DNA of 64,000 bases from Oculina patagonica. Lineage: Eukaryota. How positions within the stretch are numbered: the first letter of the stretch is position 1; each line of letters starts with the position of its first letter. Where the stretch lies: NCBI RefSeq assembly GCF_052425735.1, contig NC_135764.1:19282001-19346000 (forward strand). The letters run 5' to 3'. Below the pieces are notes generated by a model. It was not told where the DNA came from, searched no databases, and saw nothing but the letters and a program-made list of their open reading frames with translations. A program made the translations under genes and the position numbers. Below are positions 1-42,600 of the stretch, one piece after another.

Positions 1-2041
1 GGGCGGCTGGACTCAAGCACAGCACGTACTCTCTCTTCAGTGGGACCAATCCCGTACTTCGATACCAGTAGTCCCATGAAAACCACCTTGTCCATTCGGA
101 ACTGGCATTTCTCTGCATTGAGGGTGAGGTTCTTCTCCTCCAATCTCTGCATCAATCTATGGAGATTCCCGTCATGCTTCTCATCGTTCTTGCCATGTAC
201 TATCAAGTCATCCGCAATATTCTGAACTCCGCCAACATCTGATATCACTTGCGTAACTATCTGCTGGTACTTTTCGGGTGCAGAGTTTACCCCGAAGCTC
301 AATCTCTTCTACCTGAATAGTCCATCATGTGTGGCAAATGTGGTTATGTCTCGAGAGCCCTCATCTAACTCTATCTGGTGAAATCTAAGACGGAGGTGCA
401 ATTTCGAAAACACTGTACTGCCGTTGAGATTCTCCAACACTTCATCCACAGTTGGTATAGGGATCCTTTCGCGAATAATAGCTTCATTTGCCTTTCTCAT
501 GTCCACACACAACCTGATATCCCCTGATGCCTTTGGCGTAATCACCACCGGACTAACCCACGACGTCGGCCCATCTACCCGCTCCACAATATCCTTGGCA
601 ATGAGGTCTTCTACCTTCGCAGTTACCTTCTCTCGCAGTGCAAATGGAACACGCCTTGGCTTCTGAGCTATCGGTGTCACATCTGGGTCAACATTTAATT
701 TCAACTGGTAGTCCTTAAGTTTACCGACACCAACAAACACCTTTGGGTACTTAGCCTGAAGGGCTAGGGCTAGGTCCTCTCTGACAACATTGCACTGCAC
801 AGATCCACCACTCGCACCCAAACCGATTCGTAGCAGACCCAGGGCCTTTGAAGTTTCATGACCCAGCAGACATCTTTCAGTCTTGGTCACCACTAAGTGT
901 GAATTTATCTTCTTGTCACCCGCTGAGATCTCAACTTGAACCTGACCGATTACTTCTAGCTCCTTTCCACCATATGCATACAGCTGCTTGCGGCAATCTT
1001 CCATTTTCGCAGTAAGGCCTTGTGCATTAAGTTCGTCATATTCTTTCATTCCTATGAGGTTGCTTACTGAGCCAGAGTCAATAAGCACTCTTGTTGTAAT
1101 GCCACTAACACTTACTTCTACTACTGGTTCTTTAGAACTGGTTACATTGCATGTTTCCTCTCTACTCTCAGTCACTGCGAATGCAAAAGCACAGTCCTCC
1201 TCACTATCAGATACCTCTTGATCACCCACAAAGTTAGTATTGTGATTTGGACGTTGCTGGTTTGTTTTACTTTTGCTTCCATAACTATCACTATTTCCCT
1301 GACAACACAAAGCAAAATGACCATACCTTCCACATTTTGCACATTTCTTTCCCTTCGCTGGGCAGTTCCAGTCCCTTGCCAGATGCCACTCTCTTCCACA
1401 ATTGTAGCACTTTTTGTTTTTCTCATCCCTTTTTCCTTGTCTCGTCTTGACTGCATTGACACTGTCTTCCTCTACTTGCGGTGTCGGTGGGCTCACCGTC
1501 ATGTTTGTTGCCTGTCGCCCCGCCGCTTCCCATGCACGAGCTTTATCTAGCGCCTCTTCTAGTGTAATATTCCTTTGTTCCAACAGCTTTCTCTTCAGTT
1601 CAAAATCCGTTAACTTCTCGATCAGCTGATCCCTCAAATTGTCGTTCAAACTCGTTCCAAAATTGCAGTGTCGGACCTGTTTTCTTACCGAACCATAAAC
1701 TGGTCAGCAGTCTCTCCATCTTATGGTGTAAGTTGGCGAAAAACATGGCGTTCGTAGGGAATGTTCTCCTCGACTCGAAAGTAAGAGTCCAGCTTGCGAA
1801 TGGCAATTTTGTAAGCATTGTCACCCTCCTCTGGGACAGGGCCAGGGTCTTGTAGATCTTCAAATATGTCCTGTACTTCCATCTCGGCGAAATGCAAGAG
1901 TTGAGATGTCTTCTTACGGACATTCTCGATGCCCTTTCCCTCGGCATAATATTCAAACGCACGCTTCCATTTACGCCACCTCTCCGCGACTTGCGAAGCC
2001 GGTCCGGTTAAATCCAACGGCGGTAAGTGCTTCTCAGTCAT
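1..2041 (-). pseudogene. Disrupted gag-pol polyprotein of the Gypsy element
   Basis: ATG at 2041. In-frame TAA at 1721-1723, frameshift near 1690 and TAG at 309-311 (DGLFR*KRLSFG). RT motif A reads FSKLHL instead of FSKLDL. The RT frame continues from 308 to the window edge. Confidence 0.9.
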
Positions 2042-7880: not shown

Positions 7881-9467
7881 ATGAGACCTTCACATAGTTG
7901 GCTGTTAGGAAGCAAAAGCCATACTGATGACAAAAGTTACCGTGTCTTACCAACTCCACCACCAACTCCAAGACGTGACATCTATTCAGCATCCTCTAGA
8001 AGGTATGGTTTTACTTCGCCTTCTACTGGTGACACTTACAAATCAACCAGTAGTTCTACAACGTCATCTAAAAGATACGATTATGCTATCAGCGCTAGTG
8101 ACGCGTCACGCAAAACCATTACAAGAGGTACCTGGCGTTCAGTACCATCAAGAAGCCATCTAGATGTTAGTAATGTTGACTGGGTATCTAAGGATGAAAA
8201 CAAAGTTAGATACATTGCAACTTACAGTGATGATTGGGGGAATAAAGTTGTCATTTCTGAACCTCTAAACCCGTGGCGAGAACTAGGTCTCCAATCATCC
8301 GACGTGTCTTATGGGGCTATCAAGGCGGCTTTCAGAATGAAAACAACCCAGGCCAGTCGCCAAAATCGTGCAATGGTATCTGTAGCCTGCCATATTCTTA
8401 CGTCGTCAGCTGATAGGTACATGCGAAAACACGGCACAGACGAGTATCTCGTCAGAAAACATGACCACTTCATCCTCGCAGCATGTGGTCATACGCAACA
8501 GCTCAACCGTGAGATTGCTAAGAAAGGAAATCTGATAGAAGATAGAGATGAACACGGACGGACTCTGCTGTACACTGCAAGCAAGTCGGGTTTCTATGAC
8601 ACGTGCAAGTTGCTCCTGCAGAAAGGCGCGGATGTTGATGAAGCACAAAAAAATGGAAGCACGCCCCTTCATGCTGCAGCATATTTTGGTCATGCACAGG
8701 TCGTTGATGTTCTATTACAACATGGAGCAAGACCTAATATCAGAAACAACTGGGGAAATACTGCCCTGGACGAGGGCGCCAACATTGAAATACGAAGACT
8801 AATCCAAACCGCCTCGGCCGACCAGATTTTGTCTCTTGCTGCAGAGCTCAGAGAAAAGCAACTTGTGTCGAGTGTGCGAGTTATTGAATATACGGGTGAG
8901 GTCATTGCAAGGGAACTTATTCGTGACCCTCGGGTTCTTGACACAAAAACGAGAAGAGAGTGGAATACTATTCACCGAACATGGGAACTAGTATGGCATG
9001 GCACTCGTTATGCCTATTTGCCATCGATAATAGAGAAGGGCCTTCTCCCCGCTGGTTCAAGTGGCATCAATCCTGAAGCAGGCCACTTCCGGCTTGGTGA
9101 AGAGCATTTTGGCATACCTAACTGGGCAGCAGCAATCTTTGTCTCTCCAAGCATTCTTTACGCATCACACAAAGCTTATTCGGATCGAGTCTTTTCCGAA
9201 TCCCAGCAATGGTGCGTCCTTGTCAAGGCTTACTGTAAACCCGGCACTATAAAATCATATGACCCTACCGTTCTCAAGTATGAGCCGATGGAGGACGAAC
9301 CTGCTGCACCAGAGTACCGTGTGCCTGTCAGTGAAGCTGACAAAAATGTCATTTTGCGTGTTGAGTCAAGGCGCAAAGTTGTCGTCCGATCTCTGATGTT
9401 TGTCCGTGTCAGCTTTCTTGAGAATCAAGGCATTAACTTTGAGCAAGCAATTAAACTCTTGCGCTAA
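7881..9467 (+). CDS. J-like domain / ankyrin-repeat / ADP-ribosyltransferase-like protein, copy 1 (528 aa, intronless CDS)
   Basis: Uninterrupted ORF. J-like segment LNPWRELGL..VSYGAIKAAFR..AMVSVACHILTS at ~8265-8410. Ankyrin repeats DEHGRTLLYTAS, NGSTPLHAAAYFGH and NWGNTALDE at ~8480-8810. ART motifs WHGT (8994-9005), AIFVSPSILYA and PEYRV (9309-9323). Splice acceptor TCCTTAG directly precedes the ATG. Confidence 0.85.
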   Translation: MRPSHSWLLGSKSHTDDKSYRVLPTPPPTPRRDIYSASSRRYGFTSPSTGDTYKSTSSSTTSSKRYDYAISASDASRKTITRGTWRSVPSRSHLDVSNVDWVSKDENKVRYIATYSDDWGNKVVISEPLNPWRELGLQSSDVSYGAIKAAFRMKTTQASRQNRAMVSVACHILTSSADRYMRKHGTDEYLVRKHDHFILAACGHTQQLNREIAKKGNLIEDRDEHGRTLLYTASKSGFYDTCKLLLQKGADVDEAQKNGSTPLHAAAYFGHAQVVDVLLQHGARPNIRNNWGNTALDEGANIEIRRLIQTASADQILSLAAELREKQLVSSVRVIEYTGEVIARELIRDPRVLDTKTRREWNTIHRTWELVWHGTRYAYLPSIIEKGLLPAGSSGINPEAGHFRLGEEHFGIPNWAAAIFVSPSILYASHKAYSDRVFSESQQWCVLVKAYCKPGTIKSYDPTVLKYEPMEDEPAAPEYRVPVSEADKNVILRVESRRKVVVRSLMFVRVSFLENQGINFEQAIKLLR

Positions 9468-12400
9468 AAAAGAAACCAAGAAGCTCTCATCGACTATGAT
9501 ATTAATATCAGATATCAGCATCAATATTCATATCGTTCACTATGAGCAAAGAGGGCTAATTCAACTACACTTAAAAGAAAATACTTACCCAAACGTATAA
9601 GGTAAAGTACTAAATGGTACCAAGCTATCTTGCAAAATAACAAATGTATTACAACCTACGAAATATGAAAACATTCCTAGAGATATTTGGGTCCATTTTT
9701 GCAATCCAAACTAACTATAGCTAGTTTTAAAAGCTCTCAAGAAAATGATTATCGGTAAAAAGACTCTAAAATTACACGACAGCAGCCGTACATCTTGTAT
9801 AAATTATGCAACACCTATAGTGTTGCATAAATAATCAATTCATTTTTATCCACTTTATTCTAAATTGTATATATTTTAGTTCTTATCTTTTTCTCTTAAT
9901 TTGTGCACATACGACGACTGTTGGACGTTTTTATTTTAGATTTTTGAGATGTTATTTTTCCTGTTTTTAGTGTCCTCGGTTAGTGCCAAGTTTCACTACA
10001 ATGATTTGACACTTAAAAATAGGTTATTTTCTTATATGCGACATTGTCTGCTAGAAAGTTCCATATTTGCTCACTTATTGCAGTTTAGATCTATCATACA
10101 GATAACATATAAACGTTTCAACGAACCAAAATATTATTTAGCTTTTGAGTAACGCCAAAGAGTTTATGTACAATAAAAGTGAATTAAAACATAGACGATT
10201 GTGGACATGTCTTTATCATTTGAACTTTTGGGCAATTTAAGTCAGGCGTCATAAGTAGGGTACGGAAAGCGTATACAGTCAGACCTGTCCTCTTTAATAA
10301 TGAAAATTATAACCAACCCTCAGCTTTTCAGACAGTTTCTAATTTGCGGCACTGTTGCGGGGTTTATTCAAATATAATTAGCTTGGAAGAACAAAGGAAA
10401 GAGAGCCATGTGAAATAAAGGCATGCGCAGTTTCTTAAATAACAAGCAGAGTTAGTGTCGCACTCGCCAACCTTTCAAACCTTATTTTTGTACTAGTCTT
10501 TGTATATGCTTTGATGAATGATTTTTCTTCCGTCATTAACGAAATCGTTCATAAACACGACTAATCGTTTCGAGTTTTTATTGCTGTTATGATAATCAAT
10601 TTGATGATCATCATTTCGAGGCGGGGGGAGGGGGGGGGGAAGAAACTTGCTTTGTTAAACGACTCAAAAATGCGGCATAGCAGTGCCGGTCAAACGAGTG
10701 TGCGCAGTAGCTATCGAATGGTTGATAAAGGCGTAGTGAAAAGCTTGACAAAGTTCATTGTTTAGTTCGCATGTTTCGGTCTTGACCGTGCACAAAACAC
10801 AATAGCTATTTGCATTTTGTTTGCTCCTTTAAAACTTGCCGAACACCAAAACAACAAATAAACAGTGATAACGGTGACCAGTCTGGCAAAAGTAGGGCTT
10901 GCGAATTATACTAATTAAAAATAACTCCAATGATTCTGAAATGATTTACCCTTTTTTGGTTGTTAAATGTCAACCTTGACAAATTTTCCCTTGTTATTCC
11001 ACGCCGCCAAAACAGTGACGTGAAACATCAGGTGAGAAATCTGGTTAAAAAAATGCAGAAAAACATCTCAGCGGCGTGAAACATAAATCGCAAAAACCAC
11101 CACTGTTCGCATTTTACACGCATGCAGTCATTGATATTTAAATCTTTCTGTGAAAATCAAAAGTTTGGGTGACGTCTTTCTTAGCAACGGCTTGATTGAC
11201 ACAGACTTGCACCGTTTCCAGGCACCGTTATGCCGTCAAAGAAAGTGCCGACTTTCTTTCCCTTGTTCCGAGGTCACTAAACACTGCAGCTCGTCTATTC
11301 ATAATGGTATAGTAACTCTTCCTTTTCTGGTGCTTTAAAAAAAATTCTTTCAAATATTACATCGAAAATAGCGTTTCTAGTAGTGTGTATTTTGTTTTAG
11401 ATATAAAAACATCAAACTATCTGTCTGTCTGTCTGTCTGTCCGTCTATTTATCTTTCTTTGCTAATAAAAAATGTAGCAAAAAGTAACTACTTCTTTTAA
11501 GAAATATCCAGTAAAGCATGCTGGAAATTGTGTTTTCAATAATTAATTTTTAATACTTAACTCTTTCTTCCCACCCCCACCCACATAACCAGGCGTTGCG
11601 TCTGAACCCTTTGTTTAAAAAGTGTTAAAAAAACCTGCATCCTTGCGCCGCTGAGATTGCATGCAATATTGTAAATACGACTCTAACAAAGACACTTTTG
11701 AGTAATAAATTGGTTCGCTTTTATTTTAAAGGAATTTACCCCGTAATAAAGGTAGCAAGAAAATGAATAGTTCACAACAAAACTTCAGAAATATCCTAAG
11801 TGATCAAAGACATGACGAAAGTTCGAAAATTCAAACGTCGAGCTTGTTCATACTAGCTCATAACTAATTTTAAGTTGTACTCAGCCCCACAAGCTTAGTG
11901 GCATTAAACTTTTTACCGTGGATAGATAAATTATACCAATGTTTCAGAAACAAACCAAGCAAAATCAAATTCCGGTTTTCGGGTATTGACGTCATCAAAA
12001 AGTGACGTCGTCAAACGTTTATCCCCGCCTTAATCGAACTTAAAAGCATTGCAGTCGTCAGATACAGATCTTAATATCGTTTTGTCTTCCTGATGATTAT
12101 CTTTTCGTTTTTTTTTTCAGGTTTTTGCCTTTGCTAAAACGTATTGACATTGTGGTAACGAGCGTTCTTTTGATTGTGTTGACATTGTGGTAACGTGCGT
12201 TCTGCTGATGGTTTCGTTTCTGAGGAAACAAAACAAATTTAACAGCTAATGACGTCTCTGGAAAGCATTTGCGGTCACTTGAAATAGTCGATATAGGTTT
12301 ATTGCCCTTTCACGACCGGCCGCCATCCCGCAAAGGCCCTGGGGACAAGGCAGGAGAAAACTGCCGCTTCCGTCATCTTTCGCCGAAAGCCGGAAGTCAC

Positions 12401-12989
12401 TCTGAGAACATTTATTTATCTCTACTCCGATTCAGAGTTTGCTGTTGATGTTTGAGAACGACGAAACTTACTTGAAAATGTGAGTATTTCTGGTTTACTA
12501 TTGAACAGAACTATTATGATTCGACTGAACAATAGGCGATTTCGATAATTGATTTATGATTTGTTTCTGCGTGCTTGGGTTTATAAAATGATCAGTCAGT
12601 TGCCATTCAGCCGTGCTAAGAGATAAATATACGAGTTTATGTCTTGAACGGCTGATTAAGAGTGAGAGCGGCAAATATATATGGACTATGGAAGACTAGA
12701 CGAGGCACATTCGTTGCAACAACGCATATTCAAGCAGTTAATACAGAAAGTAATTTCGTTCAGCGTCAAGTCCAGTCGGCGATTAGAAAATGTATAAAGT
12801 CGACTAGGGGACAGTCGACGTACGTAAGGACACTGAAATACGAATTGACAAAATTTTCCAAAATTATGGTCCACTTCTAGGACAGAAACGAACGAGTAAA
12901 ACTACAGTCTTGTTCAGGCATGTTATCGCGCCTGTCTCCGGCTTCTGTTGGCCCGTGTGGGTTTTTTGACGTAACATGCCTGTTCAAAC

Positions 12990-14130
12990 GGTAGTATCGA
13001 AAACGAAGACCTCGAAAACGAAGACCTAAGACCTAAGACCCAGTCGAAAACTAAGACCCAGTCGAAAACTAAGACCCAGTCGAAAACGGGAGAGTTGAAA
13101 ACACTGACCCCCGATCCGCGGACTACCCACTGACCCCCCACTCCGCGGATCACCTACGGACTACTCCGCGGACTACCCTTACGGAGTACCCCTACGGAGT
13201 ACCCTATAAAATGAAACGAATTTATGTTTACGAGGGAAAGAGACAAGAGAAACTTACCTGTACCACTTGCACGATCGTTCGAAACAGCCGCCATCTTGTT
13301 TACCTCGATCCAGTCCATCTTGTTACAAACTCAAACGGGACTTCATCGGCTAGTACTAAAACCAGGAACGCCGGAATACTAAAACCTGGAACAGATAAAA
13401 TATATCGTGTTACCCTTACAAATATAAAGAGCTAACCGTAAACAGGCTAACCGAAGTTCATAGTAGGCTAACCGATGAATAGTAGGCTAACCGGAGTGAA
13501 TAGCAGGCTAACCACAGTGCATAGTAGGCTTACTATTCACTCCGGTTAGCATACTATTCACCTCGGTTAGCCTACTATAAACTTCGGTTAGCCTACTATT
13601 AATCCGTTAACCTACTATGAACTTCGGTTAGCCTGTTTACGGTTAGCTCTTTATATTTGTAAGTTTTACACGATATATTTTATCTGTTCCGGGTTTTAGT
13701 ATTCCGGCGTTCCGGCGTTCCCGATTTTAGTACTAGCCTAGTCCCGTTAGGACTGGATCGAGGTAAACAAGATGGAGGCTGTTTCGATCGATCGTGCAAG
13801 TGGCACAGGTAGGTTTCTCTTGTCTCTTGCCCCCGTAAACATAAATTCGTTTCATTTTAAAGGGTACTCCGTAGGGGTACTCCGTAAGGGTAGTCCGCGG
13901 AGTAGTCCGTAGGTGATCCGCGGAGTGGGGGGTCAGTGGGTAGTCCGCGGATCGGTGGTCAGTGTTTTCAACTCTCCCGTTTTCGACTGGGTCTTAGTTT
14001 TCGACTGGGTCTTAGTTTTCGACTGGGTCTTAGTTTTCGACTGGGTCTTAGTTTTCGACTGGGTCTTAGTTTTCGACTGGGTCTTAGGTCTTAGGTCTTC
14101 GTTTTCGAGGTCTTCGTTTTCGATACTACC
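12990..14130. mobile_element. Non-autonomous foldback (Mutator-like) DNA transposon; almost fully palindromic, 10-bp TSD
   Basis: Termini GGTAGTATCGAAAACGAAGACC...GGTCTTCGTTTTCGATACTACC. Direct repeat CTGTTCAAAC at 12980-12989 and 14131-14140. Arms of ~540 and ~600 bp meet near 13531. An 18-bp tandem unit occurs 3 times on the left and 6 times on the right. Confidence 0.9.
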
Positions 14131-16207
14131 CTGTTCAAACAGCAAGGATTTTAGTTTGCTTTAAAAAATGTTTGTGGAAGACGAGGCTTTTGTATATCGT
14201 TAGGCAGTATGTTCTACACAGTTGGTGCCGCCTCCGAAAACGAACGGCTCACGTAGCTTTTAAGATTAAATCTAGGCTTGTGAAGAAGATTTTGACTGGG
14301 CTATCTAGTGTCGTAGCTGGGTTGTAGGGCTTGAGCAGATCAACAAATATTACATCATTCTTGTTTTTTTTTGGCTAAAATAGGCAGATTCAAGTTCAGT
14401 TTAAACAAAAAGTTTCCTTGCTTTTTTGCCGATGCATTTTAGCACAAAATCAACTGATGTAGAGAAAAGCGACTTAACGCTGGCAGATTATTTAACACAT
14501 CCAGGCAAGCTTTATATTGAATTCATTTGCTGCATGATTGTTTTCCTTTGTTCTTGCGCCTAAATTATTCAAGTTATCTTGGACCGATCTAAATTAATAC
14601 AATCAAAGAAAAATAATATTTATCGGCCACTGTAAATTTAGGTCTAGACAAGCACAGTTTCTGACTTCAGGTTGATTGTTATTGGACAATAACCTTATAT
14701 CTTAGTTTTATTTGGGAGGCTCCGAAAAGTTTCCTACTTTCATTGACATAATTAAGATTGAAAACTAGTGCAACGAATCATACAGACAAATTTAAATAAC
14801 TATACAATGCTATTACAAGAAAAACATTTAAGGGTGATCATGACATCATAGATGTCACCATGGCAACGGTACAACTCTGTGAAAAGACCCCCCCCCCAAA
14901 AAAAAAAAAAAAAAAAAAATTGGAAATTATCTCGGAACCTAATTCGGTAACTTTTTTTTCTCCCGTTTTAGAAAGCAACGATAACTGATTATCTTTTATC
15001 TTTGACAAAAGACTGATTTGGCACAAGATAATTTTCTCTTAAAACTTTTGTAATAGAAGAGAAACACCGACTTGTTCTTGTATAGAAAAATTCAGGATAG
15101 GTCACCGAGCAAACTTTCGAGAAAAGGGTGATTGTTTTTTTTTAACGTTTTATTTCGGCTTAAGCAGCAGAATCAATGGACAACAGTCGGCATTAGATTT
15201 ATTTTTGTTCATAATATTAGTTGCTTGCGCGGGAAACTTTGCCACCTGCTTTAACCTGTTCTTTTAGTCGCCTCTTCGTTCTTTCTACTTATGCATTTGC
15301 CCACCAATTTTGGACAGCTCAAAATGGCGGCGGCCTGAGATGTATAGTGTTGCAAAATCCTTTGACCAGTGCCCTAGAATTCGCAAAATAAATAAATATA
15401 AGGGTGCTTTCTCGCTCATATTCTTTGTATAGGTAATCGCATAATTCCGAGTGCAATTTGGGATAAATCAGCACGAGTAAATTTTTAAAGAATAACCAAA
15501 TGCAGGCGAGTGAAATTTGATTCTGATTTATCCCAAATTGCACGAGAAAATCACATGATTACTTGTTATTAATACGCATAAAAAATTGTTATTAAAAGTG
15601 GATGACAAACAAGACGTGCTCGGTCACCTACCTTTCCGATTCGTTGTTAAAACATGCATTATCAGGTGCTTTTATCCATAGGCATACGGGCACCTTCGGA
15701 CCTGGGGGCGGAGACCTTGTTGCATGCCCGAAAAAAAAAAAAAATGGCATGGGTTGAAAGCCGAATAAACAGGCAAACGAAATGGACAACAAAACGTGCG
15801 TTAAAATATTTATTATTATTATTATTATAATTGTACAAACCTTGCCTGTTTGCTTAAACGAAACGAAAGTTCTTTAATTAATCTCGTGGCGTTACCAGAA
15901 GATGTCAATGCACTGAATCCTTTTTCTTCGGAAATATTTTATTTACTCACTTATTTTCAATATTTTCTCTGTCTTGTTGCCCGAATTGTTAGCGTTTTGC
16001 CCAAAACATTTAAGCACTGGGTGGGGGCTGCATCCCCCCCCCCCCACTCCGCCTCGTAGCCTATGCTTTTATCCTCATTCAGCTGTATTGGTATGGGCTG
16101 AAATGTGCAACTTCAGTTCATGTTTGTAATGAATTCCTTCTTTAGTCTTCTTTACGGGCTGGCGCGTAAAAAAATCCGTGATTTGGCGCGCGTTCCGACT
16201 TCCCTGT

Positions 16208-16341
16208 CAGTCAATTTAATTTCAACTTTCTGCACTCAATTGCAATTTTTTACACTCAATTTTAACTTTCTCCACTGTTTGGGATTAATTGACATGCTCT
16301 CAGTTAATGAGCTTGCAGAAATTTTTGCAGGTTTATTATTA
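16208..16341 (+). repeat. Interspersed repeat; second copy inverted at ~27367-27490
   Basis: TTTCAACTTTCTGCACTCAATT...GGGATTAATTGAC(A/G)TGCTCTCAG..AATGAGC.TGCAGAAATTTTTG is shared by both loci. Confidence 0.7.
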
Positions 16342-17146
16342 TGCATTGAATTATGCCCCGCCAACGTTAATTCCTGGCGCCACCTCTGTTAGATCAATGC
16401 TATTCGCGATCGTGGATTAAAAAACAACTTGAAACAACAACTTTATGTAGGATAGTAAAGAAATGTAGGTTTGCATTAGGACGTTCTAGTAAAAACGAGA
16501 CGTTTTAATTTTACTAGTCTGTTAGTTTTAAGGCCCGTGTTTGCCAAACACACTAAAAAATATATTCTTTTCACCGCATGCTTTTATAGTGAAATGGCTT
16601 AAACAAAAACGAATTTGTGCTATACTCGTTGAATAAACGAAGTCTGTAGTATTCCAAAAAAATTCTTCACTAATGCCCCCCCCCCCCCCCCCCAAACCAC
16701 CATATGAAAGTTTACCGTCCACTGAATTGAGTAATAGTATGCTTTCTGCAGCACGATCTCCAACAAAGTTACTTTCTGTTTACAAGGTAAACGATTTGTT
16801 TTGTTCTTGCCAAAGGCTTGTATTACGTACAGTAACCATTTTCACGTCGCTTATTAGGTAAAGAGCAAATCACAGCTTGCCGTTTATGAAGCAAGATTTG
16901 GCAAGGCCCAAGTGAAAATTTCGGGACTTACTGGCTTGTTAGTCGCCAAAGTAAGCAAAACATTTCACGTTAACCAGATTTGGATTTCTTGGTGTAGATA
17001 CATCCAGTATATAATTGCGTAAAAAAATGTGATTGTATTGCGCATAAATAGAAAGAACATCACTGCCTTTCAGAAATGATGTACTACATCGTTAGTAAAA
17101 GATGTTTAATTATATAATAACATATATGCAATATATTTTTCCTCAG

Positions 17147-19106
17147 ATGGGAGGTTTGTTCTCAAAGAATAAAAGCCAAAATGGTGACTATTCATCAAAG
17201 GCAGGATTCACCACAAAAACTGAAGTGTGTTCGTCATCTTCTACGTATAGTTATGGCGGCGCGTCACACAGAAGCTATCCAACTAGTAGCTGGAGCTCGA
17301 TGCCATCGCGGTCATCAACGGAGAGTTATTCCTTCAGTGGAAGTAGTTTCGACAACGCAGCATCAAAGGAAAAGTACGGGGTTGTTACTGATTTGAAGTC
17401 AACGTCATCAAGAGGCTTTGATGCGGCAACTGTCAAGTTCAAGTCACATGAAGCTTATGTTGCTCCTACTGTATCTAATAGGTGCAAGTCGACATCGGTC
17501 AATGTTTCTAGTAATGGAGGCTATCCAACTGGTAGCTGGGCCTCAGCATCATCCAGGAGCTCTGTGTCTACAACTAATGTTGAAAGCGTATCAACTAAAA
17601 CTTATCCTACTGGTGGTGACAAAGCTAAACGTTACGTGGCTGACCGTGTCCCTAACTCAGCATCTTACAAAAGATATGATAATCTTGACGTTAAATCAGC
17701 ATCAGTCAAAAGCTATGCTACTGCTGCTAGAGTCGAATCTGCCACTTACAGAGACAAGCCAGTGCCATCCAAACGGCATGCAAATAACAAACGTAGATCG
17801 GCATCAACCACTCGTAATCGTTATCCAGATGATGAAAGCACTAGTAGACGGGTCGCAACTTACGGTGCTAGAGGAGGAGGAAGAGTTATCATTTCTGTAC
17901 CTCTAAACCCATGGCAAGTGCTGGGTCTCCATTCGTCTGGAGTATCTCAGCGGAGCTGTTAAGGAAGCTTTCAAGAAGAAGATAACCCAACCAGTGCGCC
18001 AGAATCGCGCAATGGTATCTATAGCCTATCATATGCTCACGTCATCAGCTGGAAGGTACACCCGAATTCAAGGCAAGGACGAATTTATTGTCAGAAGGCG
18101 TGACCACTTCATGCTTGCAGCGTGTGGCCACACAAAAGAGCTTACCCTTAGGATAGACAAGAAAGGAAATCTTGTTCATGACAGAGACGAGCATGGTCGG
18201 ACACTGTTGTACATCGCAAGCAAGTCAGGTTTCTATGACACTTGCAAGCTACTCCTACAAAAAGGCGCTTCTGTCAATGAAGCGCAAAGAGATGGAAGTA
18301 CTCCTCTTCATGGTGCAGCATATTTCGGTCATGATTTAGTCGTTGGACTACTACTTCAACATGGAGCGAGAAGTGACATCAAAAACAAGTGGGGAAATAC
18401 TGTCCTGGACGAAAGTACCACACCCAAGATGCGGAATCTAATTCAAACTGCATTGGCTGACGATATTTCATCCCTCGCTACATCGCTCAGGGACAAGCAA
18501 CTTGTATTGAGCGTGCGGCTTATTGAGTATCAGGGAGAAGTCATAGCGAAGGAACTTACTCGTGATCCTCGCACCCTTGATGTACACACACGAGCAGAGT
18601 GGAATGGTATGCAAACCTCCTGGGAAACAGCATGGCATGGCACTCGTTATAAATATTTGCAATCAATAATAGAGAAGGGTCTTCTCCCCGCTGGTTCAAG
18701 TGGTATCACGCCGGCAGCAGGCCACTACAGTCTCGGTGAAGTGCATTTTGGCATTGCCAACTGGGCAGCGGCAATTTTCGTCTCTCCAAGCATTCTTTAC
18801 GCGGCACATGTATGCTATTCGGATCGAATCTTCTCTGAATCCCAACAGTGGTGCGTCCTGGTCAAAGTCTACTGTAAACCTGGCACCTATAAGTCATATG
18901 ACCCAACCGTTTTCCAGTACAAGCCGATGGATGGTGAACCTGTCATGCCAGAGTACCGTGTGCCTGTCACCGAAACGGACAAGAATGTCATTATGCGCGT
19001 CGAGTCTACCCGCAGCGTTGTCGTTCGATCCCTGATTTTCGTGCGACTCAGCTTTCTCGAAAATCAAGACATTAACTTTGAGAAAGCAATGACACTCTTG
19101 CGCTAA
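17147..19106 (+). CDS. J-like / ankyrin / ADP-ribosyltransferase-like protein, copy 2 (~650 aa if repaired); +1 frameshift at 17948-17951 (recent pseudogene or assembly error)
   Basis: ORFs 17102-17962 and 17994-19106 join if 1 nt is removed (TCT CAGC GGA GCT GTT AAG versus TCT TAT GGG GCT ATC AAG in copy 1). The C-terminal 370 aa are gap-free colinear with copy 1, roughly 70-75% identical by eye. Acceptor TTTTTCCTCAG precedes ATG 17147 (MGGLFSK). Confidence 0.8.
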
Positions 19107-19639
19107 CCATGAACTTTCACACCTGCTAGATACCTGAAATCGACAGCGTTCGTCATTCCTCCACACAGTTTGCTTGAAGATTTGCTTCAAATTTCGCTGT
19201 TGATACTCATGAGGTTAGCGTGCTTTTGAACGTAATGAGGGATAATGTCCGCTCTTGATTAGATATTTCAAAAGCTATGTTGACTGAACATAGAACATAG
19301 GCACCTGTTGAGACGTCTTTCAATGAACAATGTTTGTTTTAAGTTTAGAGTGCAAAAATGGTAGAGGAATCGTTTGCCACTCCAAAGAACTATTCTGTTA
19401 ACTTTCCTTTTTGTGCACCGGACACAAATTACGTATACTGAACGCATTTGTCTCAAACCCACCGGATTTTTGCGACAGCTTGTTTTTTTTTTTTTTTTTA
19501 TCAGGTCACATCCACGCCACTGCTTTAATTTATGGGCACCATTGGCTACCAATTTAGTATTCTGATCGAATTTAAAATTTTGCTGCATGGCAAAGCACCT
19601 AACTTTATCTGTAAACTTATTATCGTAAACATCGACTAG

Positions 19640-24600: not shown

Positions 24601-27600
24601 AGCGCTGAACGAGGGTGGGGGCTTAGGCTAGAGGGGAAAATCATTATTGCTTTGGAGCTCGTCCTTAGCCTGCTCGAAGTGCGAAAACGTTTCCGTGAGC
24701 GGATTTTGGACTGCCTTTCACAGGTAGAACTAACTTTCACAGATAGAAGTAAAGACAAAATGACGACAAAACACAATTCGATAGATTGTACAAATTTTAC
24801 AGGTTACTTACCAGCATACAGGGTAACTGCCATGGAGACAGGTCAACAGCTGCAATGTTCACTAAGCTCTCTGAAACAAAGAAAAACATAGCCCACAGTT
24901 AATACGAAGGAAGACTCCGCAAAACGTAATGAATGAAAATAACGGAGAACAAGAAATGAGAGGTTCAGTTAAAGGATCAAGTAAGGGATGGCGCATTCTC
25001 AAAATTCAGCCTAATTTTTCAATTTTGACCATGCTTGTTCCGTTTGGTTTTTTATAACCTCTTTGGTTCTTTTCTGTCTTGCTTGTAACCTACTATTTAC
25101 AGTGTAAAGGTTTCTTTGTGAATATGTGCGTCATTAAAAATGACTATAGATAACGACACAGCCCACATAATACAGCCAATCTTCTCTTTACCAATAGCAG
25201 GTCTGTGCGCCTTTGGAGGAGCTCGACTACCGTGCCTTTCACAATGAAGAACATAACCCTGAAAACAAAAGCAAGACAAAAAATTAAATAAGTTTTAAGA
25301 ATTAAGATGGTTTCCGCACAACTTACCAAAAATTTACCAAAAACTTTGGTGGAATTTTTTTTGTACAGAAAAAAAAAACCANNNNNNNNNNNNNNNNNNN
25401 NNNNNNNNNNNNNNNNNNNNNNNNNNNNNNNNNNNNNNNNNNNNNNNNNNNNNNNNNNNNNNNNNNNNNNNNNNNNNNNNNNNNNNNNNNNNNNNNNNNN
25501 NNNNNNNNNNNNNNNNNNNNNNNNNNNNNNNNNNNNNNNNNNNNNNNNNNNNNNNNNNNNTAACTGTTTTTATTAGACCATCAAACATCAGAATTTGCTG
25601 CCTTTTTTGGCAGGCAAGGTCTTGGTCACGGCATAACACAAAACTGTGGTCGAGTGAGTGTGTTTGTAAAAGGAACAGACCAACCCACATCATTGAAATT
25701 ATCCTAGCACAACGTGCTTCTTCCCTGCAATGTCCAAATCCTGTGCACGTCTAGTGGCTACTCGTGTTTAGTTAACTGTTAAGGTCGGGACACACTAGGC
25801 GACACGTCGCTGCACAGCGCGGCGACATGTGCTGCGACAGTCGCCCGGCGCGACAAAAGTCGCGCGAAACGCGATGCGCAGAACAGACTGGTGAATTGTG
25901 GACACACACAGGACAAAATGTTGTCGCAGCGTGTGTACACGTCGCCACAAGTCGCGCGACAAAATATGAATTAACCAATGAGAGCGCGCATTTTCGCCGT
26001 ATGAATATGGAAAACTGGGTCGCATCCCACCCAATTCGCTGTTGTGCACCAAATAAACACCTGTCGCAGCGACTGTGTAGAGCACACGGAGCGACGCGCA
26101 GCGACCTGCGGGACTGTCGCATAGTGTGTCCCGACCTTTAGTAACTTAGTAAAAGAACCCACACACTTATCGTAAAGAGTAGGGCACGAAGTTCCCCGTG
26201 TTGTGGTCTGGTCTTTGCCCATTGTGCCGTTGTACTGTTGAAATGCTCGAAGATATTAGCTATGTTAAAAGCTACTCTACAATCCGAGGGTAAATAAAGT
26301 ATTCACTTCACTTCACTTCACTAAACAACTGGTCAATGTAAGGTTTATTGGTACGCATATCGTCGGGAGATCAACCGACATGCAGGTAGTATACAATATA
26401 TATTCCTAAGACCTTACCAATTTCGAGAAAACTGTCATGTTCCTGTTACTTACCCCATCTGTACCCACATAAATATGATTAGGATCGTGTGGCAGGAACC
26501 TCATTACTAGCGCCTGTAAACTCATCTTGCTTCGGAAGTCCCTAAAAATAAAAAAACATCCTCATTGCTATGTTCTGGGCACGCAAAATTAAAATTTATT
26601 TATCAATTTTATGTTACCTTTTACCTTAAACGGTAACTTGGCTTGTCAGATGGAAGTCTTAAGCAACTAACGTTTTGAGTGTTAGCCCTTTTGTACTGCA
26701 TGACGAACAGCTGACGATCGCAACGTCGCTTGCAAAATAATTTTTGTCAGTTTGCTGGCGCACTACAACGGCTTTTGACGACAAACAACACTTGACATTT
26801 TTCTCAACATTCCAAACAAAGGAAACCTTACTTTTGCAGCTAATCTTATTATTCACCACATAACTTCCAAACTATCATGCAAACCAATACCATAGTATTG
26901 AAACTACAAACAACTGAAGGCTTTATACTTAGATCAACCTTTATTGTACCCTTCTTGCCTTTCACAATTCAAGATATTTATTTTATCAGGAGTAAAATTG
27001 AAGTACTGGCTGTCTGGGATAACCATTAGGGCTAGCGGAGCCAGGCAGTCAGTTGATATAAGCATAAAACCACAGCAAGCATAATACCACGACAGACCTA
27101 AAAGGTGATTGAAGAGATATCGAGGAGCTTTTGATTAGCTTAATTTTTCCTCCAGGAGACAATCCTAAAATAAAAAATAAAAAATGACTAAGAAATACTT
27201 CCAAGAAACATCCGCACGTGGGCAACGGGGCAGGAAAGCCTGTGTACCAGGCTAAGTCCCATCTCTTCTTTCTCGGAGAAGTTGTACAATGACGTAACAT
27301 TAACACTTCTGACATTATTCTGACGTAAAAATATGCGAAATACACACAAATGCTTGTTCTACGTTTTAATAATATACACACAAAAATTTCTGCATGCTCA
27401 TTGGCTGAGAGCACGTCAATTAATCCCAAAAGTGAGAAAGTTGAATTGAGTGAAAAATTGAAATTGAGTGCAGAAAGTTGAAATAAATGTGAAGGATGTC
27501 GGAAAGCACGCCAAAAAAGATGGCGGCCGAGTCGGAGTTTGCATGAGAGAGAGACGAGCAAAACATAACGACAGTTTGACCGAACGATACTACTGAAAGC

Positions 27601-39600: not shown

Positions 39601-42600
39601 TATTTTTAAGCTAAGAAGCTTGTGGGGCTGCCATATTCCCTGTCAAACTGGGATTTGGAAATGTTGGAGGGTGTAAAACCTGAGAGCTTGGAGAGAAACC
39701 CTTGCAACAAGAACCAGATCCAACAACAAACTCAACCATCTTATGATGCCAGGTCCTGGATTCAAAACTGGGCCACAATGGTGGGAGGCGAGTGATTTCA
39801 CCACTGCGCCATTCCTGCTCCCTCCCATGAAAGGATGCTTGAAGGTCTGTAAAGATCTTTGCCGTAAATATTGACATGCTTATTATAATTACCTTTTATC
39901 ATCCTTTCTATCATCATGACTTCTTTCTCTTGAGCCATCCTGCAAAACAATTAAACGAGGCATAATTTAACTAACAACCTTTAGAAAAAAAAGAACGTAT
40001 CTGACACAACCTCACTTTGTTTCAATATTTAAAAATAGTGAAGCAAAACAATCAAGGCTGTTATTTTTTGGAGTGTCCACTATTTGAGTTAGCTGTACAA
40101 GTACATTTACATATTTATTAAATAACTAATAAAAGTTTCTTTACCATGACAAGATTAAATAAGAAGTATTGATTCCCTACCTGGGTGGCAAAGGGATATT
40201 AGTCAATCAAACAGTGTAGGCTATCGTCAAGATTTTTTGCCAGGTTTGTACCCAAGAAAATTAATTACTGTGGTGAAGAGAGGCCTTATTATGAAAGATG
40301 TCTAAGACTCTGCTGAATTGTAAGCTGTACAATTACCTCATTTTTGGAACGCTCCTTTCTTCTATCCGAGTCTCGATTTTCCTTGTCATGTCTATCACTT
40401 CTTCGCCTTTCATCTTTGTCAGAATCTTTATTTTCTTTATCCAATCGATCTCTGTCTTTTTCTTTCCTTCGTTCTCTCTCCTTGTCCCTCTCCCTGTCCC
40501 TTGTCTTTTCTTTTCCTCTATCCCTGTCCTCCCGTTCTCTCTCTTTCCTCCTCTCCTTGCTGGTGTCTCTATCTCTGCTTCTTTCATGTCTGTCTGCTTC
40601 TCCCCTCCTTTCCCTTTCTTTTTCTCTTCTGTGTTCCCTGTCTCTGTCCTCACTACTTTTCTCTTTTCTCCTGTCACGACTTCTGTCACGTTCACCATTT
40701 CTCTCTCTTCCTTCACGGCCTTTCTCCTGGTCTTTACTCTTCCCATCGTCTCGTTCTCTTCTTCTGTCCCTATCACGTTCTTTATCTCCACTTTCCTTTT
40801 CTTTTCGTCTTTCTTGACTTCTGTCTCTTTCTTTTGATCTTTCAGCATCTTTCGTTCTTTCACTTCCTTCTTTTTCTCTTCTTTTTGTCCTGTCTTTGTC
40901 CTTGTCGTGCTCTCGTTCTTTTTCTCTTGGTCTCTCCTTATCCCTATCTTCATCTCTTTTTCTCCTTTCCTTCTCCCGATCTCTGTCCTTTTCTCCCTCT
41001 CTGCCTTTTTCCCGATCCCTGTCTCTTGCCCCTCCCTTGTCTCTTTCTCTATCCCTGTCCCTATCTGATCTCCTGCGATCTGTTTCCCCATTGGCTACAT
41101 CATCATGACCTCTTCTCTTTCTATCGTCATCTTTGTCCTGGGAACGAAAAAAACTGTCACATGTAATAGTATAACAACACTGACAGTGATAGACAACATT
41201 ATTCACTGATGATGAAAAACAACCTTCAATATCACAATCAAAGACAAAAAGAAAAAAACACTACCTTTGACTTGAAACAAAGGTGCCTTAAAAAGGTGAT
41301 CAAATGCATCAAAGACATTTCAAAGGTAGAAGGGACTACATGTAATTAACAAACTGATTTTGACTAATGTTTACTGATTCTGATTGATTACACCTCTGAT
41401 AGGTTGCAAAGCTTTAAAACTTTAGTTCCTTTGATAAAGTACAATGTCAAAGGGCTATGAAAAGTCCTATGAAAAGTGTCTACACCTTTGAATGTTGTGT
41501 CCATCCAGTGTTAACTATCTACATGTGACCTACCAAAAGTTCCATACCCAGGGAAGTCAATATTTGCTAATTAAGCAAAATAAATACAGGTTACCTTATG
41601 TCCAGTTGTAGCAACCCAAAATATGAATTTAACCATGAAATTCATGGAGGTTTACAAAACTGATCTTTTCTTTTATAGCCTGTATGCTCCTTTAATTACA
41701 CGGTACAAAATTACTTGTAATACTACATGATGTATGTGTTGCAGTTTAAAATGAATTGAAGGGGTGTGTGGAATAAGGCCCTATTTGGATCCTGATCTAA
41801 TATAAAATTCTCCCTTTGATTTATAAGCATACACAGGGCAAATTGGAAGGGGAATCTAGCAATTTATCAGAAATAACTGGGGGCTTTATTCCAGGCACCC
41901 TTTCATTTATAGGTCAAAATGATTTCAAACTAGTTTGATTTGTATTTTTCTTTGTTCCTGATTTATAAATATTGTAATCCTAAAAAAGACAAATACAAAT
42001 CAAGCTAGTTTGAAATCATAATCTAAAATCATTTAAACCCCAAAATATGGATTATTTTGTGTGCTTTATTAATTATAGGACATGTACAGTACATGTACGT
42101 AACGTGTATATGTGGTGGTTTAAATTATTAATTTTTTTCTTGTGACATTTTTTAATCCAGTTTGATTTTTCTTTTTCTTTGTTTACATCATGATAATGAA
42201 TATAAACAACAGAAATAAACCAAACCAAAAAACAAACTTTAACCACAACATTTCCATTTTCTTTACAACCATCAGGGCTTCTGATATTATGCGATGTTGC
42301 GATTTCGCATAATTGACCTCAAATCGCAACTTTTTTGCATAATTCATCAAAAATCGCATAATTTGTACAAAATCGCACAATTTGAGAAAACATAAAGGAA
42401 ATTATCGCTTAAACTAAGTTTTAAGACAACTTCAACATTGTTTCAATGTGATTTACCTGTTAAACAACCTTGGAAAACCTCTGATGTGGTTTCCAATCGA
42501 ACAACATTACTTCGGGCAGGCAACTTTCTTTTTCAGTTTCAACTTAGCCATAACAACATTCACACAAATACCGGTAAATTTGCTTTCTATCTTTGCTTTC

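What the first reader, a model, noticed from the sequence alone, without database searches (positions are those of the whole stretch)
7881..19106. Tandem pair of J-like / ankyrin / ADP-ribosyltransferase genes: candidate undescribed effector family
Seen: two same-strand paralogues ~9 kb apart share a gap-free ~410-aa core. It consists of a DnaJ-like helical segment, 3-4 ankyrin repeats and a C-terminal domain with WHGT..SIIEKGLLP, AIFVSPSILYA.H..Y and PEYRV. Many differences between the copies are synonymous, which points to purifying selection on the core, while the N-termini have diverged strongly. Established: HG[TS], [YF]x[ST] and ExxV motifs mark the diphtheria-toxin/PARP ART fold, and the spacing resembles the NEURL4/Gig2-type clade. 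Tankyrase also joins ANK and PARP, but it has ~20+ repeats and a SAM domain, both absent here. Inference: a sensor (ANK, J-like) coupled to an NAD+-consuming enzyme, duplicated in tandem, is the layout of an innate-immune or proteotoxic-stress effector. I know of no characterised protein with this architecture.
Basis: partly seen in the sequence, partly recalled or inferred. Interest (0 to 1): 0.88.

Follow-up and report, generated by a model that had tools for sequence, protein, structure and literature searches.

The report
Coral ankyrin–NEURL4-type ADP-ribosyltransferase gene pair
Two neighbouring coral genes encode an uncharacterised protein type, a J-domain-like helix bundle plus ankyrin repeats plus a NEURL4/PARP-like ADP-ribosyltransferase domain with its catalytic residues conserved; it belongs to a large unstudied eukaryotic family, and what it does in the cell is unknown.

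Summary
The window is from a stony-coral genome. Gene 1 (7881-9467) and gene 2 (CDS 17147-19106) are same-strand paralogues with a gap-free core: 73% amino-acid identity over 384 aa, dN/dS 0.21, dS 0.78.

The assembly shows a 1-base frameshift in gene 2 at 17949. Contigs of four public runs all lack that base, so it is an assembly error. Spliced RNA contigs show that gene 2 is transcribed.

The C-terminal domain models confidently (pLDDT 81) as a PARP-type ART fold: VIA Z 9.6 to PARP10, and all 46 Foldseek PDB hits with E ≤ 0.001 are PARPs. The closest cellular match is the NEURL4 C-terminus. A family profile also hits the ART exons of an NHR-linked gene in the same genome.

His373, Phe420, Tyr427 and Glu478 are at least 90% conserved in relatives down to about 21% identity. 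The J-like segment is supported only by profile-profile comparison (91% probability) and lacks HPD throughout the family.

The family has 466 clusters at 50% identity. Named members are anthozoan, and ESM Atlas clusters point to rotifers. Some members carry a fused ADP-ribosylglycohydrolase. I found no paper on this architecture.

The immune or stress-effector reading is untested, and the pair is old, with separate orthologues in Desmophyllum. Verdict: a new architectural variant of a known ART kind, of moderate interest.

The parts
7881..9467 (+). Gene 1: single coding exon, 528 aa. The ATG directly follows a TCCTTAG splice-acceptor-like site.
   Evidence: ORF list. Exact match to database protein P0001. 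Acceptor context.
7881..8240 (+). Gene 1 N-terminal tail: Ser/Thr/Arg-rich and low-complexity. Starts MRP, so it has no Gly2.
   Evidence: Composition 21% Ser. No Pfam hit. Left out of the AF2 core model.
8256..8435 (+). Gene 1 J-like three-helix module (LNPWxxLGL...IKAAF...RQNRAM.S.A.HILTS..RY), without HPD.
   Evidence: hhalign against coral J domains: 91% probability, P 1.1e-6. PDB J domains E 0.085 and 1.1. No HPD. AF2 helices 4-7, 17-27 and 33-47 in core numbering.
8463..8813 (+). Gene 1 ankyrin repeats: a degenerate cap, two canonical repeats and a C-terminal cap.
   Evidence: Pfam Ank_2 E 7e-23 and Ank E 1e-17. AF2 model.
8814..9464 (+). Gene 1 linker helices plus NEURL4-type ART domain. 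His373 is at 8997-8999 and Glu478 at 9312-9314.
   Evidence: AF2 pLDDT 81. PARP-fold matches. NEURL4 match. Conservation.
12395..12479 (+). Gene 2 alternative 5' non-coding exon, start approximate. It ends at 12479 and is followed by a GTGAGT donor.
   Evidence: Loose ends of RNA contigs X8 and X10 before 17147 map uniquely to 12462-12479. Donor sequence.
16900..16950 (+). Gene 2 second 5' non-coding exon, start not determined. It ends at 16950 and is spliced to 17147.
   Evidence: X10 contig ends at 16950 and continues with ATGGGAGGTTTGTTCTC, which is 17147 onward.
17147..19106 (+). Gene 2 coding exon. It starts MGGLFSK (myristoylation-like). It is one ORF of about 652 aa once the extra assembly base at 17949 is disregarded.
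   Evidence: CAG|ATG acceptor at 17146/17147.
17949..17949 (+). Extra base in the assembly that splits gene 2 into two frames. It is absent from contigs of four public runs.
   Evidence: 'Left out 1' at 17949 at 100% of depth in X8, X16, X2 and X10.
17900..18101 (+). Gene 2 J-like module. It spans the assembly artefact.
   Evidence: Alignment to gene 1.
18102..18452 (+). Gene 2 ankyrin repeats.
   Evidence: Pfam. Gap-free alignment to gene 1.
18453..19103 (+). Gene 2 ART domain. The His of WHGT is at 18636-18638 and the Glu of PEYRV at 18951-18953.

Best explanation
These are two anciently duplicated, expressed coral genes for intracellular proteins. Each has a disordered Ser-rich N-terminal tail and a compact three-part core. 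In the gene-2 clade the tail begins with a conserved MGxxxS motif, which suggests N-myristoylation and membrane tethering.

The core has three parts:
- a degenerate J-domain-like helical cap without HPD;
- 3-4 ankyrin repeats;
- a NEURL4-type, PARP-like ADP-ribosyltransferase domain.

The most likely mechanism is as follows. The ART domain binds NAD+ through the conserved His373 (WHGT) and the aromatic pair Phe420/Tyr427. It uses Glu478 (PEYRV) to transfer ADP-ribose onto a substrate. The ankyrin platform would recruit that substrate, much as tankyrase uses its ankyrin clusters.

The J-like cap is more likely a structural or regulatory part of the rigid core than an Hsp70 co-chaperone.

Shown: the fold, residue conservation, purifying selection, transcription of gene 2, the age of the duplication, and fusion of the same core to an ADP-ribosylglycohydrolase in relatives.

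Inferred: catalytic activity, whether it makes mono- or poly-ADP-ribose, whether the acceptor is protein or nucleic acid, myristoylation, and the biological role.
For: - Fold. AF2 models are confident: core pLDDT 86.5 and pTM 0.88, ART domain pLDDT 81. All 46 Foldseek PDB hits with E ≤ 0.001 are PARP catalytic domains. The top 17 VIA-align entries are all PARP-type domains, including the TASOR pseudo-PARP and the plant SRO1 and RCD1 PARP domains. The best are PARP10 Z 9.6 (140 aa, rmsd 4.1), PARP16 Z 9.4 and PARP15 Z 9.3. Tpt1 follows at 6.5 and diphtheria toxin at 5.4.
- NEURL4 link. Foldseek matches the NEURL4 C-terminus at E 2.6e-7 to 4e-7. NEURL4's domain is an experimentally active ART, and its HGS and ELEW mutants are dead (PMC8932523).
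- Sequence profile against PDB. Nearly all weak hits are ART-fold enzymes aligned on the HGT motif. Tpt1 scores E 0.002 and PARP3 E 0.056.
- Same-genome link. The family profile hits three colinear exons (FHGT; IFVSPSVRYSGHNCY; QEIEW) about 4-5 kb downstream of an NHR domain on the same strand.
- Conservation. H373, G374 and F420 are invariant. T375, H402, W415, Y427, Y433, T463 and E478 are at least 90% conserved in the 78-sequence alignment, and R480 likewise in the ART-domain alignment.
- Domain association. Four family members reach Pfam PARP, best E 1.7e-6. Relatives fuse the same core to ADP_ribosyl_GH (E 3e-58) or to an R-S-E ART.
- Selection and age. dN/dS is 0.21. Each copy has its own Desmophyllum orthologue.
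- Expression. Spliced contigs show that gene 2 is transcribed.
- N-terminus. MG[GNS][LS][LF]S is conserved across gene-2-type orthologues.
Against: - No biochemical data exist for any family member.
- The Tyr position of the classical H-Y-E triad holds Phe. NEURL4 has Leu there, according to the table in PMC7955679. Activity therefore cannot be read directly from canonical PARPs.
- Pfam PARP is sub-threshold on both window proteins: 13-15 bits against a cut-off of 26.7.
- I could not inspect residue-level structural superposition, so equating F420, Y427 and E478 with PARP positions rests on motif order and secondary structure.
- The donor-loop region is poorly modelled (pLDDT below 50 at model residues 89-95).
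- Myristoylation rests only on a motif, and gene 1 lacks Gly2.
- Transcription of gene 1 was not shown by spliced reads. It is only held in contigs of runs that are guessed to be RNA.
Confidence: 0.62

Rival explanations
1. Pseudo-enzyme scaffold. The ART-like domain no longer catalyses ADP-ribosylation, as in the TASOR pseudo-PARP or PARP13. The protein would act as an ankyrin-based adaptor, perhaps one that binds NAD+ or ADP-ribose.
For: The triad Tyr is replaced by Phe. TASOR pseudo-PARP (Z 7.5) and PARP13 (Z 8.9) are among the structural matches. Pfam PARP is sub-threshold.
Against: The His and Glu that pseudo-PARPs typically lose are invariant or at least 90% conserved down to about 21% identity. 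NEURL4 is active with a non-Tyr residue at the same position. Relatives carry a fused ADP-ribosylglycohydrolase, which makes sense only if ADP-ribose is being written.
Confidence: 0.15
2. Immune or stress effector. The ankyrin and J-like parts would sense a pathogen or a proteotoxic signal and unleash the ART domain. The ART domain would then deplete NAD+ or modify host or pathogen molecules, including nucleic acids.
For: The family is large and variable: 466 clusters at 50% identity. Its N-termini diverge fast. It is fused to trypsin-like proteases, TLDc, IBR and a second ART in relatives. Copies are arranged in tandem here and on contig C10. By sequence the HGT motif scores best against Tpt1, a nucleic-acid-directed ART.
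Against: There are no expression data under challenge. The core is under purifying selection in every domain, ankyrin included, with dN/dS 0.17. The tandem pair is old with one-to-one orthologues in another coral family. There are only four full copies and one fragment in this genome, so this is not a lineage-specific burst. The J-like module lacks HPD, so an Hsp70 link is unsupported. The fold is nearer to protein-modifying PARPs than to Tpt1 or DarT.
Confidence: 0.18
3. One of the pair is a decaying pseudogene, because gene 2 is frameshifted in the assembly.
For: The assembly shows two ORFs in different frames joined only through a one-base shift near 17949.
Against: Contigs of four runs all lack the extra base at 100% of depth. 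Two of these runs have the window's organism label. Gene 2 is spliced and transcribed. dN/dS is 0.21. The catalytic motifs are intact.
Confidence: 0.03

Closest known systems
NEURL4 C-terminal ART domain (predicted by de Souza & Aravind 2012; activity shown by Cardamone et al. 2022, PMC8932523)
   Same: It has the same PARP-like ART fold and is the closest named cellular structural match (Foldseek E 2.6e-7 to 4e-7). Both have an HG[ST] His, a non-Tyr hydrophobic residue at the triad Tyr position (Leu in NEURL4, Phe here) and a conserved Glu. Neither is covered by a Pfam model. An NHR-linked ART in this same genome shares the IFVSPS..Y..H..Y motif.
   Different: NEURL4 has six neuralized-homology repeats and no ankyrin or J-like module. 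The window proteins have no NHR domain. Sequence identity is about 17-19%. These genes are not NEURL4 orthologues. They carry the same ART type in a different architecture.
Tankyrase (PARP5a/b)
   Same: Ankyrin repeats lie N-terminal to a PARP-fold ART domain. Language-model features place tankyrase-like clusters nearby, at 0.91-0.92. It is a plausible analogy for substrate recruitment by ankyrin repeats.
   Different: Tankyrase has five ankyrin repeat clusters (about 24 repeats), a SAM polymerisation domain and a canonical PF00644 H-Y-E domain. Here there are 3-4 repeats, no SAM, and PF00644 is sub-threshold. Structural Z is only 7.1-7.2.
Mono-ART PARPs (PARP10, PARP15, PARP16, PARP14)
   Same: They are the best solved-structure matches: Z 9.3-9.6 with about 130-140 aligned residues.
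   Different: Identity is about 9-12%. Those enzymes have H-Y-I, H-Y-L or H-Y-Y triads, whereas this family keeps the Glu. Their accessory domains differ (macro, WWE, RRM, transmembrane).
J-domain (DnaJ, PF00226) and J-like proteins
   Same: Helix I-II-III order and the 'xxP[YWF]xxLG[LIV]...S...[IV]KxAF[KR]' and 'A..ML[TS]....RY' signatures match. hhalign gives 91% probability.
   Different: There is no HPD and the helix II-III loop is shorter. Pfam and PDB sequence hits are not significant. A role in stimulating Hsp70 ATPase is therefore unlikely.
Fish Gig2 family (PMC3617106)
   Same: Both are PARP-like ART relatives outside Pfam's PARP threshold, and both are multi-copy.
   Different: Gig2 is described as specific to non-amniote vertebrates, as interferon-induced, and as carrying its own C-terminal domain without ankyrin repeats.

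Membership tests
ADP-ribosyltransferase superfamily, PARP/diphtheria-toxin (H-Y-E) fold | Split beta-sheet ART fold | tested here: met
   All 46 Foldseek PDB hits with E ≤ 0.001 are PARP catalytic domains. VIA-align Z 9.6, 9.4 and 9.3 to PARP10, PARP16 and PARP15. ESM Atlas TM 0.50-0.55 to PARP clusters.
ADP-ribosyltransferase superfamily, PARP/diphtheria-toxin (H-Y-E) fold | NAD+-binding His in an HG[ST] motif at the end of strand 1, followed by a helix | tested here: met
   WHGT sits at the end of strand 58-63 of the model, followed by helix 66-75. HMMER aligns it to the HGT/HGS of Tpt1 and PARPs. It is invariant in 78 of 78 relatives.
ADP-ribosyltransferase superfamily, PARP/diphtheria-toxin (H-Y-E) fold | Triad Tyr in strand 2 (Y-[FL]-[AST]) | tested here: not met
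   The position holds an invariant Phe (A-I-F-V-S). NEURL4 has Leu here (PMC7955679). A nearby Tyr427 is at least 90% conserved and may supply the stacking aromatic. This assignment rests on motif order, not on a residue-level superposition.
ADP-ribosyltransferase superfamily, PARP/diphtheria-toxin (H-Y-E) fold | Catalytic Glu at the start of strand 5 | tested here: met
   Glu478 (PEYRV) starts strand 167-170 of the model. It is at least 90% conserved in the family.
Pfam PARP (PF00644) | Score above the gathering threshold (26.7 bits) | tested here: not met
   13.2 and 14.8 bits for the two window proteins. Four of 78 relatives match at E ≤ 0.001, best 1.7e-6.
NEURL4-type ART family | ART domain more similar to the NEURL4 C-terminus than to canonical PARPs | tested here: met
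   Foldseek: NEURL4 at E 2.6e-7 to 4e-7 and TM 0.49-0.50 by query, against PDB PARPs at E about 1e-4 and TM 0.34-0.39. The two libraries differ, so this comparison is rough. The family profile hits three colinear exons next to an NHR domain in the same genome.
NEURL4 orthologue | Neuralized homology repeats (PF07177) N-terminal to the ART domain | tested here: not met
   No NHR hit in either protein. The NHR loci of this genome lie elsewhere, on C6, C4 and C11.
J-domain (DnaJ, PF00226) | HPD tripeptide in the helix II-III loop | tested here: not met
   It is absent at the homologous loop in 78 of 78 family members. One member has HPD at a non-homologous downstream site.
J-domain (DnaJ, PF00226) | Significant sequence or profile similarity to J domains | tested here: inconclusive
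   hhalign against seven J domains of this genome gives 91% probability and P 1.1e-6 over 51 columns. Pfam DnaJ matches only 2 of 38 members at E ≥ 0.04. PDB J domains score E 0.085 and 1.1 over helices I-II only.
Tankyrase | SAM domain and five ankyrin repeat clusters | tested here: not met
   Pfam finds only 3-4 ankyrin repeats and no SAM.
Ankyrin repeat proteins | Tandem 33-residue helix-turn-helix repeats | tested here: met
   Ank_2 E 7e-23 and Ank E 1e-17. AF2 helix pairs.
Gig2 family | Gig2-specific C-terminal domain and sequence similarity to Gig2 | not tested
   No Gig2 sequence was available through the tools. Only the paper's description was read.
N-myristoylated proteins | Met-Gly-x-x-x-[ST] at the true N-terminus | tested here: inconclusive
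   Gene 2 starts MGGLFSK at the first codon of its coding exon. The motif is conserved in gene-2-type orthologues. Gene 1 starts MRP. The modification itself is not testable here.

The most novel reading that the evidence does not exclude
The J-like/ankyrin/NEURL4-type ART core would be a previously unrecognised, widely distributed eukaryotic signalling enzyme class. In this reading the degenerate J-like cap gates the ART active site in response to a bound partner, and the enzyme writes ADP-ribose on membrane-proximal targets. Relatives that carry a fused ADP-ribosylglycohydrolase would form self-contained writer-eraser switches. In corals it could then be a stress or immune switch.
Probability: 0.15. 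Interest if true: 0.8.

Novelty: new variant of a known kind. Interest (0 to 1): 0.55.

Why it matters
NEURL4-type ARTs are the least studied branch of eukaryotic ADP-ribosyltransferases. Only NEURL4 itself has been assayed, and the domain has no Pfam model, so databases label these proteins 'ankyrin repeat protein' or 'TRPA1-like'.

This work shows that the same ART type sits in a conserved three-part core (J-like, ankyrin, ART). The core is found in corals, probably in rotifers, and in many unnamed eukaryotic assemblies. Its catalytic residues are kept, and some relatives carry a fused eraser domain.

That gives ADP-ribosylation researchers a compact, intronless and probably soluble model enzyme of about 400 aa. 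It gives coral biologists a correct annotation for a gene family that appears in transcriptome lists under misleading names. It also flags a one-base assembly error that would otherwise make gene 2 look like a pseudogene.

Tried and rejected
- Whole-core profile against PDB sequences: swamped by ankyrin and DARPin hits, so uninformative for the other domains.
- Coral-only ART profile against PDB: nothing significant, with Tpt1 at E 1. The broader profile was needed.
- Whole-core model against AFDB Swiss-Prot: M-phase phosphoprotein 8 scored E 1.2e-7 over 5-382, but with rmsd 17-18 Å. I take this as driven by the ankyrin repeats and did not pursue it.
- Taxonomy of the divergent relatives: the listing of cluster members, the look-up of encoding contigs and a profile search returned almost no organism names. 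Only the anthozoan names and 'Rotifera' from ESM Atlas clusters are tool-based. My impression that some AFDB accessions are from rotifers, a choanoflagellate and dinoflagellates comes from memory and is not used as evidence.
- Bacterial or archaeal relatives: the A6 alignment was too divergent for the scan. The scan with A2 found none. This method sees only close relatives.
- Literature: no paper mentions the named homologues or this architecture. Aravind et al. 2015 (PMC6126934) is not held, so a mention there cannot be excluded.
- Pseudogene reading of gene 2: rejected on read evidence.
- Complex prediction was not run, because no specific binding partner is claimed.


Full report
**What the window is.** GC content is about 38%, long ORFs are sparse, and the named protein matches are from stony corals and an octocoral (Desmophyllum, Stylophora, Oculina, Orbicella, Paramuricea). 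This marks the window as a scleractinian coral chromosome: G000 contig C7, in a 529 Mb assembly.

**The observation.** Gene 1 is one intact ORF, 7881-9467, 528 aa. It matches database protein P0001 exactly.

In the assembly, gene 2 is two ORFs (17102-17962 and 17994-19106) in frames that differ by one base. I laid contigs of four public runs on 16900-19400. Two runs carry the window's own organism label and two carry other labels. All four lack one base at 17949, at 100% of depth. The frameshift is therefore an assembly error, and gene 2 is a single ORF.

The same call showed spliced contigs. One contig ends at 16950 and continues with the sequence at 17147. Two others that start at 17147 are preceded by a sequence that maps uniquely to 12462-12479, where a GTGAGT donor follows. 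Gene 2 is therefore transcribed, has two alternative 5' non-coding exons, and has its coding sequence in one exon. That exon begins exactly at ATG 17147 (MGGLFSK), after a CAG acceptor.

The ATG of gene 1 likewise sits directly after a TCCTTAG acceptor-like site. Contigs of the same runs hold 83-100% of gene 1's sampled words. That suggests gene 1 is transcribed but does not prove it.

**Similarity between the copies.**
- tblastn aligns gene 1 aa 145-528 to gene 2 without gaps at 73% identity.
- DNA similarity (78%) is limited to the core coding region.
- dN/dS is 0.215 with dS 0.78. It is similar in the J-like (0.18), ankyrin (0.17) and ART (0.25) parts.
- The Ser-rich N-terminal tails barely align.

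**The C-terminal domain.** Pfam sees only ankyrin repeats. PARP (PF00644) is sub-threshold on the WHGT region, at 13-15 bits against 26.7.

- AlphaFold2 models. With a 45-sequence alignment, the core (aa 128-528) models at pLDDT 86.5 and pTM 0.88. With a 31-sequence alignment, the C-terminal 217 aa model at pLDDT 81 and pTM 0.82.
- Foldseek against the PDB. All 46 matches with E ≤ 0.001 are PARP catalytic domains.
- VIA-align against 48,161 representative chains. It ranks PARP10 (Z 9.6, 140 aa, rmsd 4.1), PARP16 (9.4), PARP15 (9.3), PARP13 (8.9), PARP3, PARP4 and PARP1 first. TASOR pseudo-PARP scores 7.5, Tpt1 6.5 and diphtheria toxin 5.4.
- AlphaFold DB. The best named cellular match is the C-terminus of NEURL4, residues 1370-1561, at E 2.6e-7 to 4e-7. 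That domain was predicted to be an ART in 2012. It was shown to be active in 2022, with dead HGS and ELEW mutants (PMC8932523).
- Broad family profile (67 sequences) against PDB sequences. It hits almost only ART-fold enzymes, all aligned on the HGT motif. Tpt1 scores E 0.002 and PARP3 E 0.056, followed by PARP2, PARP16, PARP15, PARP1 and DarT.
- Own genome. Searched with that profile, it yields the four full copies, one fragment and two weak exon hits on contig C4.

One of those weak hits lies 4-5 kb downstream of a neuralized-homology (PF07177) match on the same strand. Inside that 10 kb, three colinear exons match successive parts of the profile:
- FHGT
- IFVSPSVRYSGHNCY
- QEIEW

This is a sequence-level link between the family and NHR-associated, NEURL-type ART domains.

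A published table lists NEURL4's triad as H-L-E, with motifs HGS, LLS and ELE, and marks it as undetected by Pfam (PMC7955679). The window proteins have HGT, FVS and PEY. They share with NEURL4 a hydrophobic residue in place of the classical Tyr.

**Conservation.** A profile search of 1.84 billion representatives found 466 clusters at E ≤ 0.001 and 260 at E ≤ 1e-10. I aligned 78 long members, which have 21-61% identity to gene 1.
- His373, Gly374 and Phe420 are invariant.
- Thr375, His402, Trp415, Tyr427, Tyr433, Thr463 and Glu478 are at least 90% conserved in that alignment, and Arg480 likewise in the ART-domain alignment.
- 64 of the 78 carry ankyrin repeats, and four reach Pfam PARP (best E 1.7e-6).
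- Single members carry extra domains: ADP-ribosylglycohydrolase after the core (E 3e-58), an R-S-E type ART, TLDc, a trypsin-like protease or an IBR domain.

A fused eraser domain is good circumstantial evidence that the core writes ADP-ribose.

**The J-like segment.** The segment LNPWxxLGL...S...IKAAF...RQNRAM.S.A.HILTS...RY is conserved across the wider family as P[YWF]xxLG...K.AF...RQ.RA..SLAY.M.
- In the model it forms a short helix, two longer helices and a beta-hairpin before the first ankyrin-like repeat.
- Pfam DnaJ matches only 2 of 38 members, at E ≥ 0.04.
- A PDB profile search gives a J domain (2cug) at E 0.085 and DNAJB8 at E 1.1, over helices I-II only.
- hhalign against seven J domains taken from this same genome gives 91% probability and P 1.1e-6 over 51 columns, spanning helices I-III. 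The HPD loop is shortened and has no counterpart.
- No family member has HPD at that loop.

I conclude that the module probably derives from a J domain but cannot work as one. The high pTM of the whole core suggests it is an integral cap.

**Evolution and copy number.** The genome has the two copies here, plus two full copies and a fragment on contig C10. One of the C10 copies has a TAA stop inside the match.

In a maximum-likelihood tree, gene 1 groups with Desmophyllum OS493_006850 (support 100/98). Gene 2 groups with Desmophyllum OS493_006856 and a Stylophora protein (92/88). A third clade holds the Oculina and Orbicella proteins. The two Desmophyllum proteins come from the same 4.5 Mb contig. 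The tandem pair therefore predates these corals, which agrees with dS 0.78.

Gene-2-type orthologues keep an MG[GNS][LS][LF]S start, which is a myristoylation-like motif. Gene 1 and its orthologues have lost the Gly.

Outside Anthozoa, ESM Atlas clusters of the same architecture are labelled Rotifera. Most other relatives come from unnamed assemblies. A pattern scan found no bacterial or archaeal relative.

**Interpretation.** The best-supported reading is an active NEURL4-type ADP-ribosyltransferase. Its ankyrin platform would recruit substrates, and the gene-2 form would be tethered to membranes.

Three points remain inferred: catalysis itself, the acceptor, and whether the product is mono- or poly-ADP-ribose.

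The pseudo-enzyme rival is weakened by the conserved His and Glu and by the eraser fusions.

The whole core, ankyrin repeats included, is under purifying selection. The pair is old with one-to-one orthologues. The J-like module lacks the motif needed to engage Hsp70.

**Novelty.** The ART type is known, and so is the general idea of ankyrin repeats plus an ART domain, as in tankyrase. I did not find the J-like/ankyrin/NEURL4-type core described anywhere as a conserved, widespread unit. One relevant review could not be read.

I class the finding as a new architectural variant of a known kind. I rate interest as moderate. It opens a tractable model for an understudied ART branch and corrects misleading annotations, but it does not overturn current understanding.

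Another first-stage note on this genome (s1-317042) reports a NEURL4-type ART-like gene elsewhere. That is in line with the C4 exons I found, but I did not check whether it is the same locus.

Noticed in passing
window 17949: The assembly carries one extra base here. Contigs of four public runs all lack it. It turns an intact gene into an apparent pseudogene, and other single-base errors may exist in this assembly.
   Followed up: yes
window 13033-14087: Tandem 18-bp repeats at 13033-13087 and 13979-14087 are reverse complements of each other. They flank 21/40-bp repeat arrays at 13444-13530 and 13531-13634 that also mirror each other. This foldback-like structure lies inside gene 2's long first intron and may be a foldback or MITE-type element. 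The mechanical ORF at 13913-14164 (repeated VFDWVL) is just this repeat.
   Followed up: partly
window 12300-12400: A GC-rich stretch lies just upstream of gene 2's distal 5' exon, which ends at 12479. It is the likely promoter region. It lies between the two paralogues, about 3 kb downstream of gene 1's stop.
   Followed up: no
window 25382-25560: A run of 179 N (assembly gap or masked stretch).
   Followed up: no
window 1-2000 and 40001-42000: Strong negative GC skew (-0.21 and -0.26) with negative AT skew, unlike the rest of the window. Cause not examined.
   Followed up: no
G000:C10:18574234-18584240 (minus strand): A second tandem cluster of the same family: two full copies (63% and 61% identity to gene 1, one with a TAA stop inside the match) and a fragment with a TGA stop.
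   Followed up: partly
L020 = G000:C4:50843000-50852999 (minus strand): A multi-exon gene with a neuralized-homology domain (50851660-50852349, with several stops in the six-frame match, so probably introns or decay). Three downstream exons encode a NEURL4-type ART with motifs FHGT, IFVSPSVRYSGHNCY and QEIEW.
   Followed up: partly
proteins P0170 and P0357 (metagenome or unnamed assemblies): Relatives in which the J-like/ankyrin/ART core is followed by a full ADP-ribosylglycohydrolase domain. This puts a writer and an eraser in one polypeptide. P0170 was seen in 14 near-identical sequences from several sources.
   Followed up: partly
proteins P0018, P0019, P0022 and similar (coral relatives of gene 2): A subgroup starts MWNLLSK instead of MGNLLSQ or MGNLLSR. 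A Trp replaces Gly at position 2, which would abolish the putative myristoylation site in those species or alleles.
   Followed up: no
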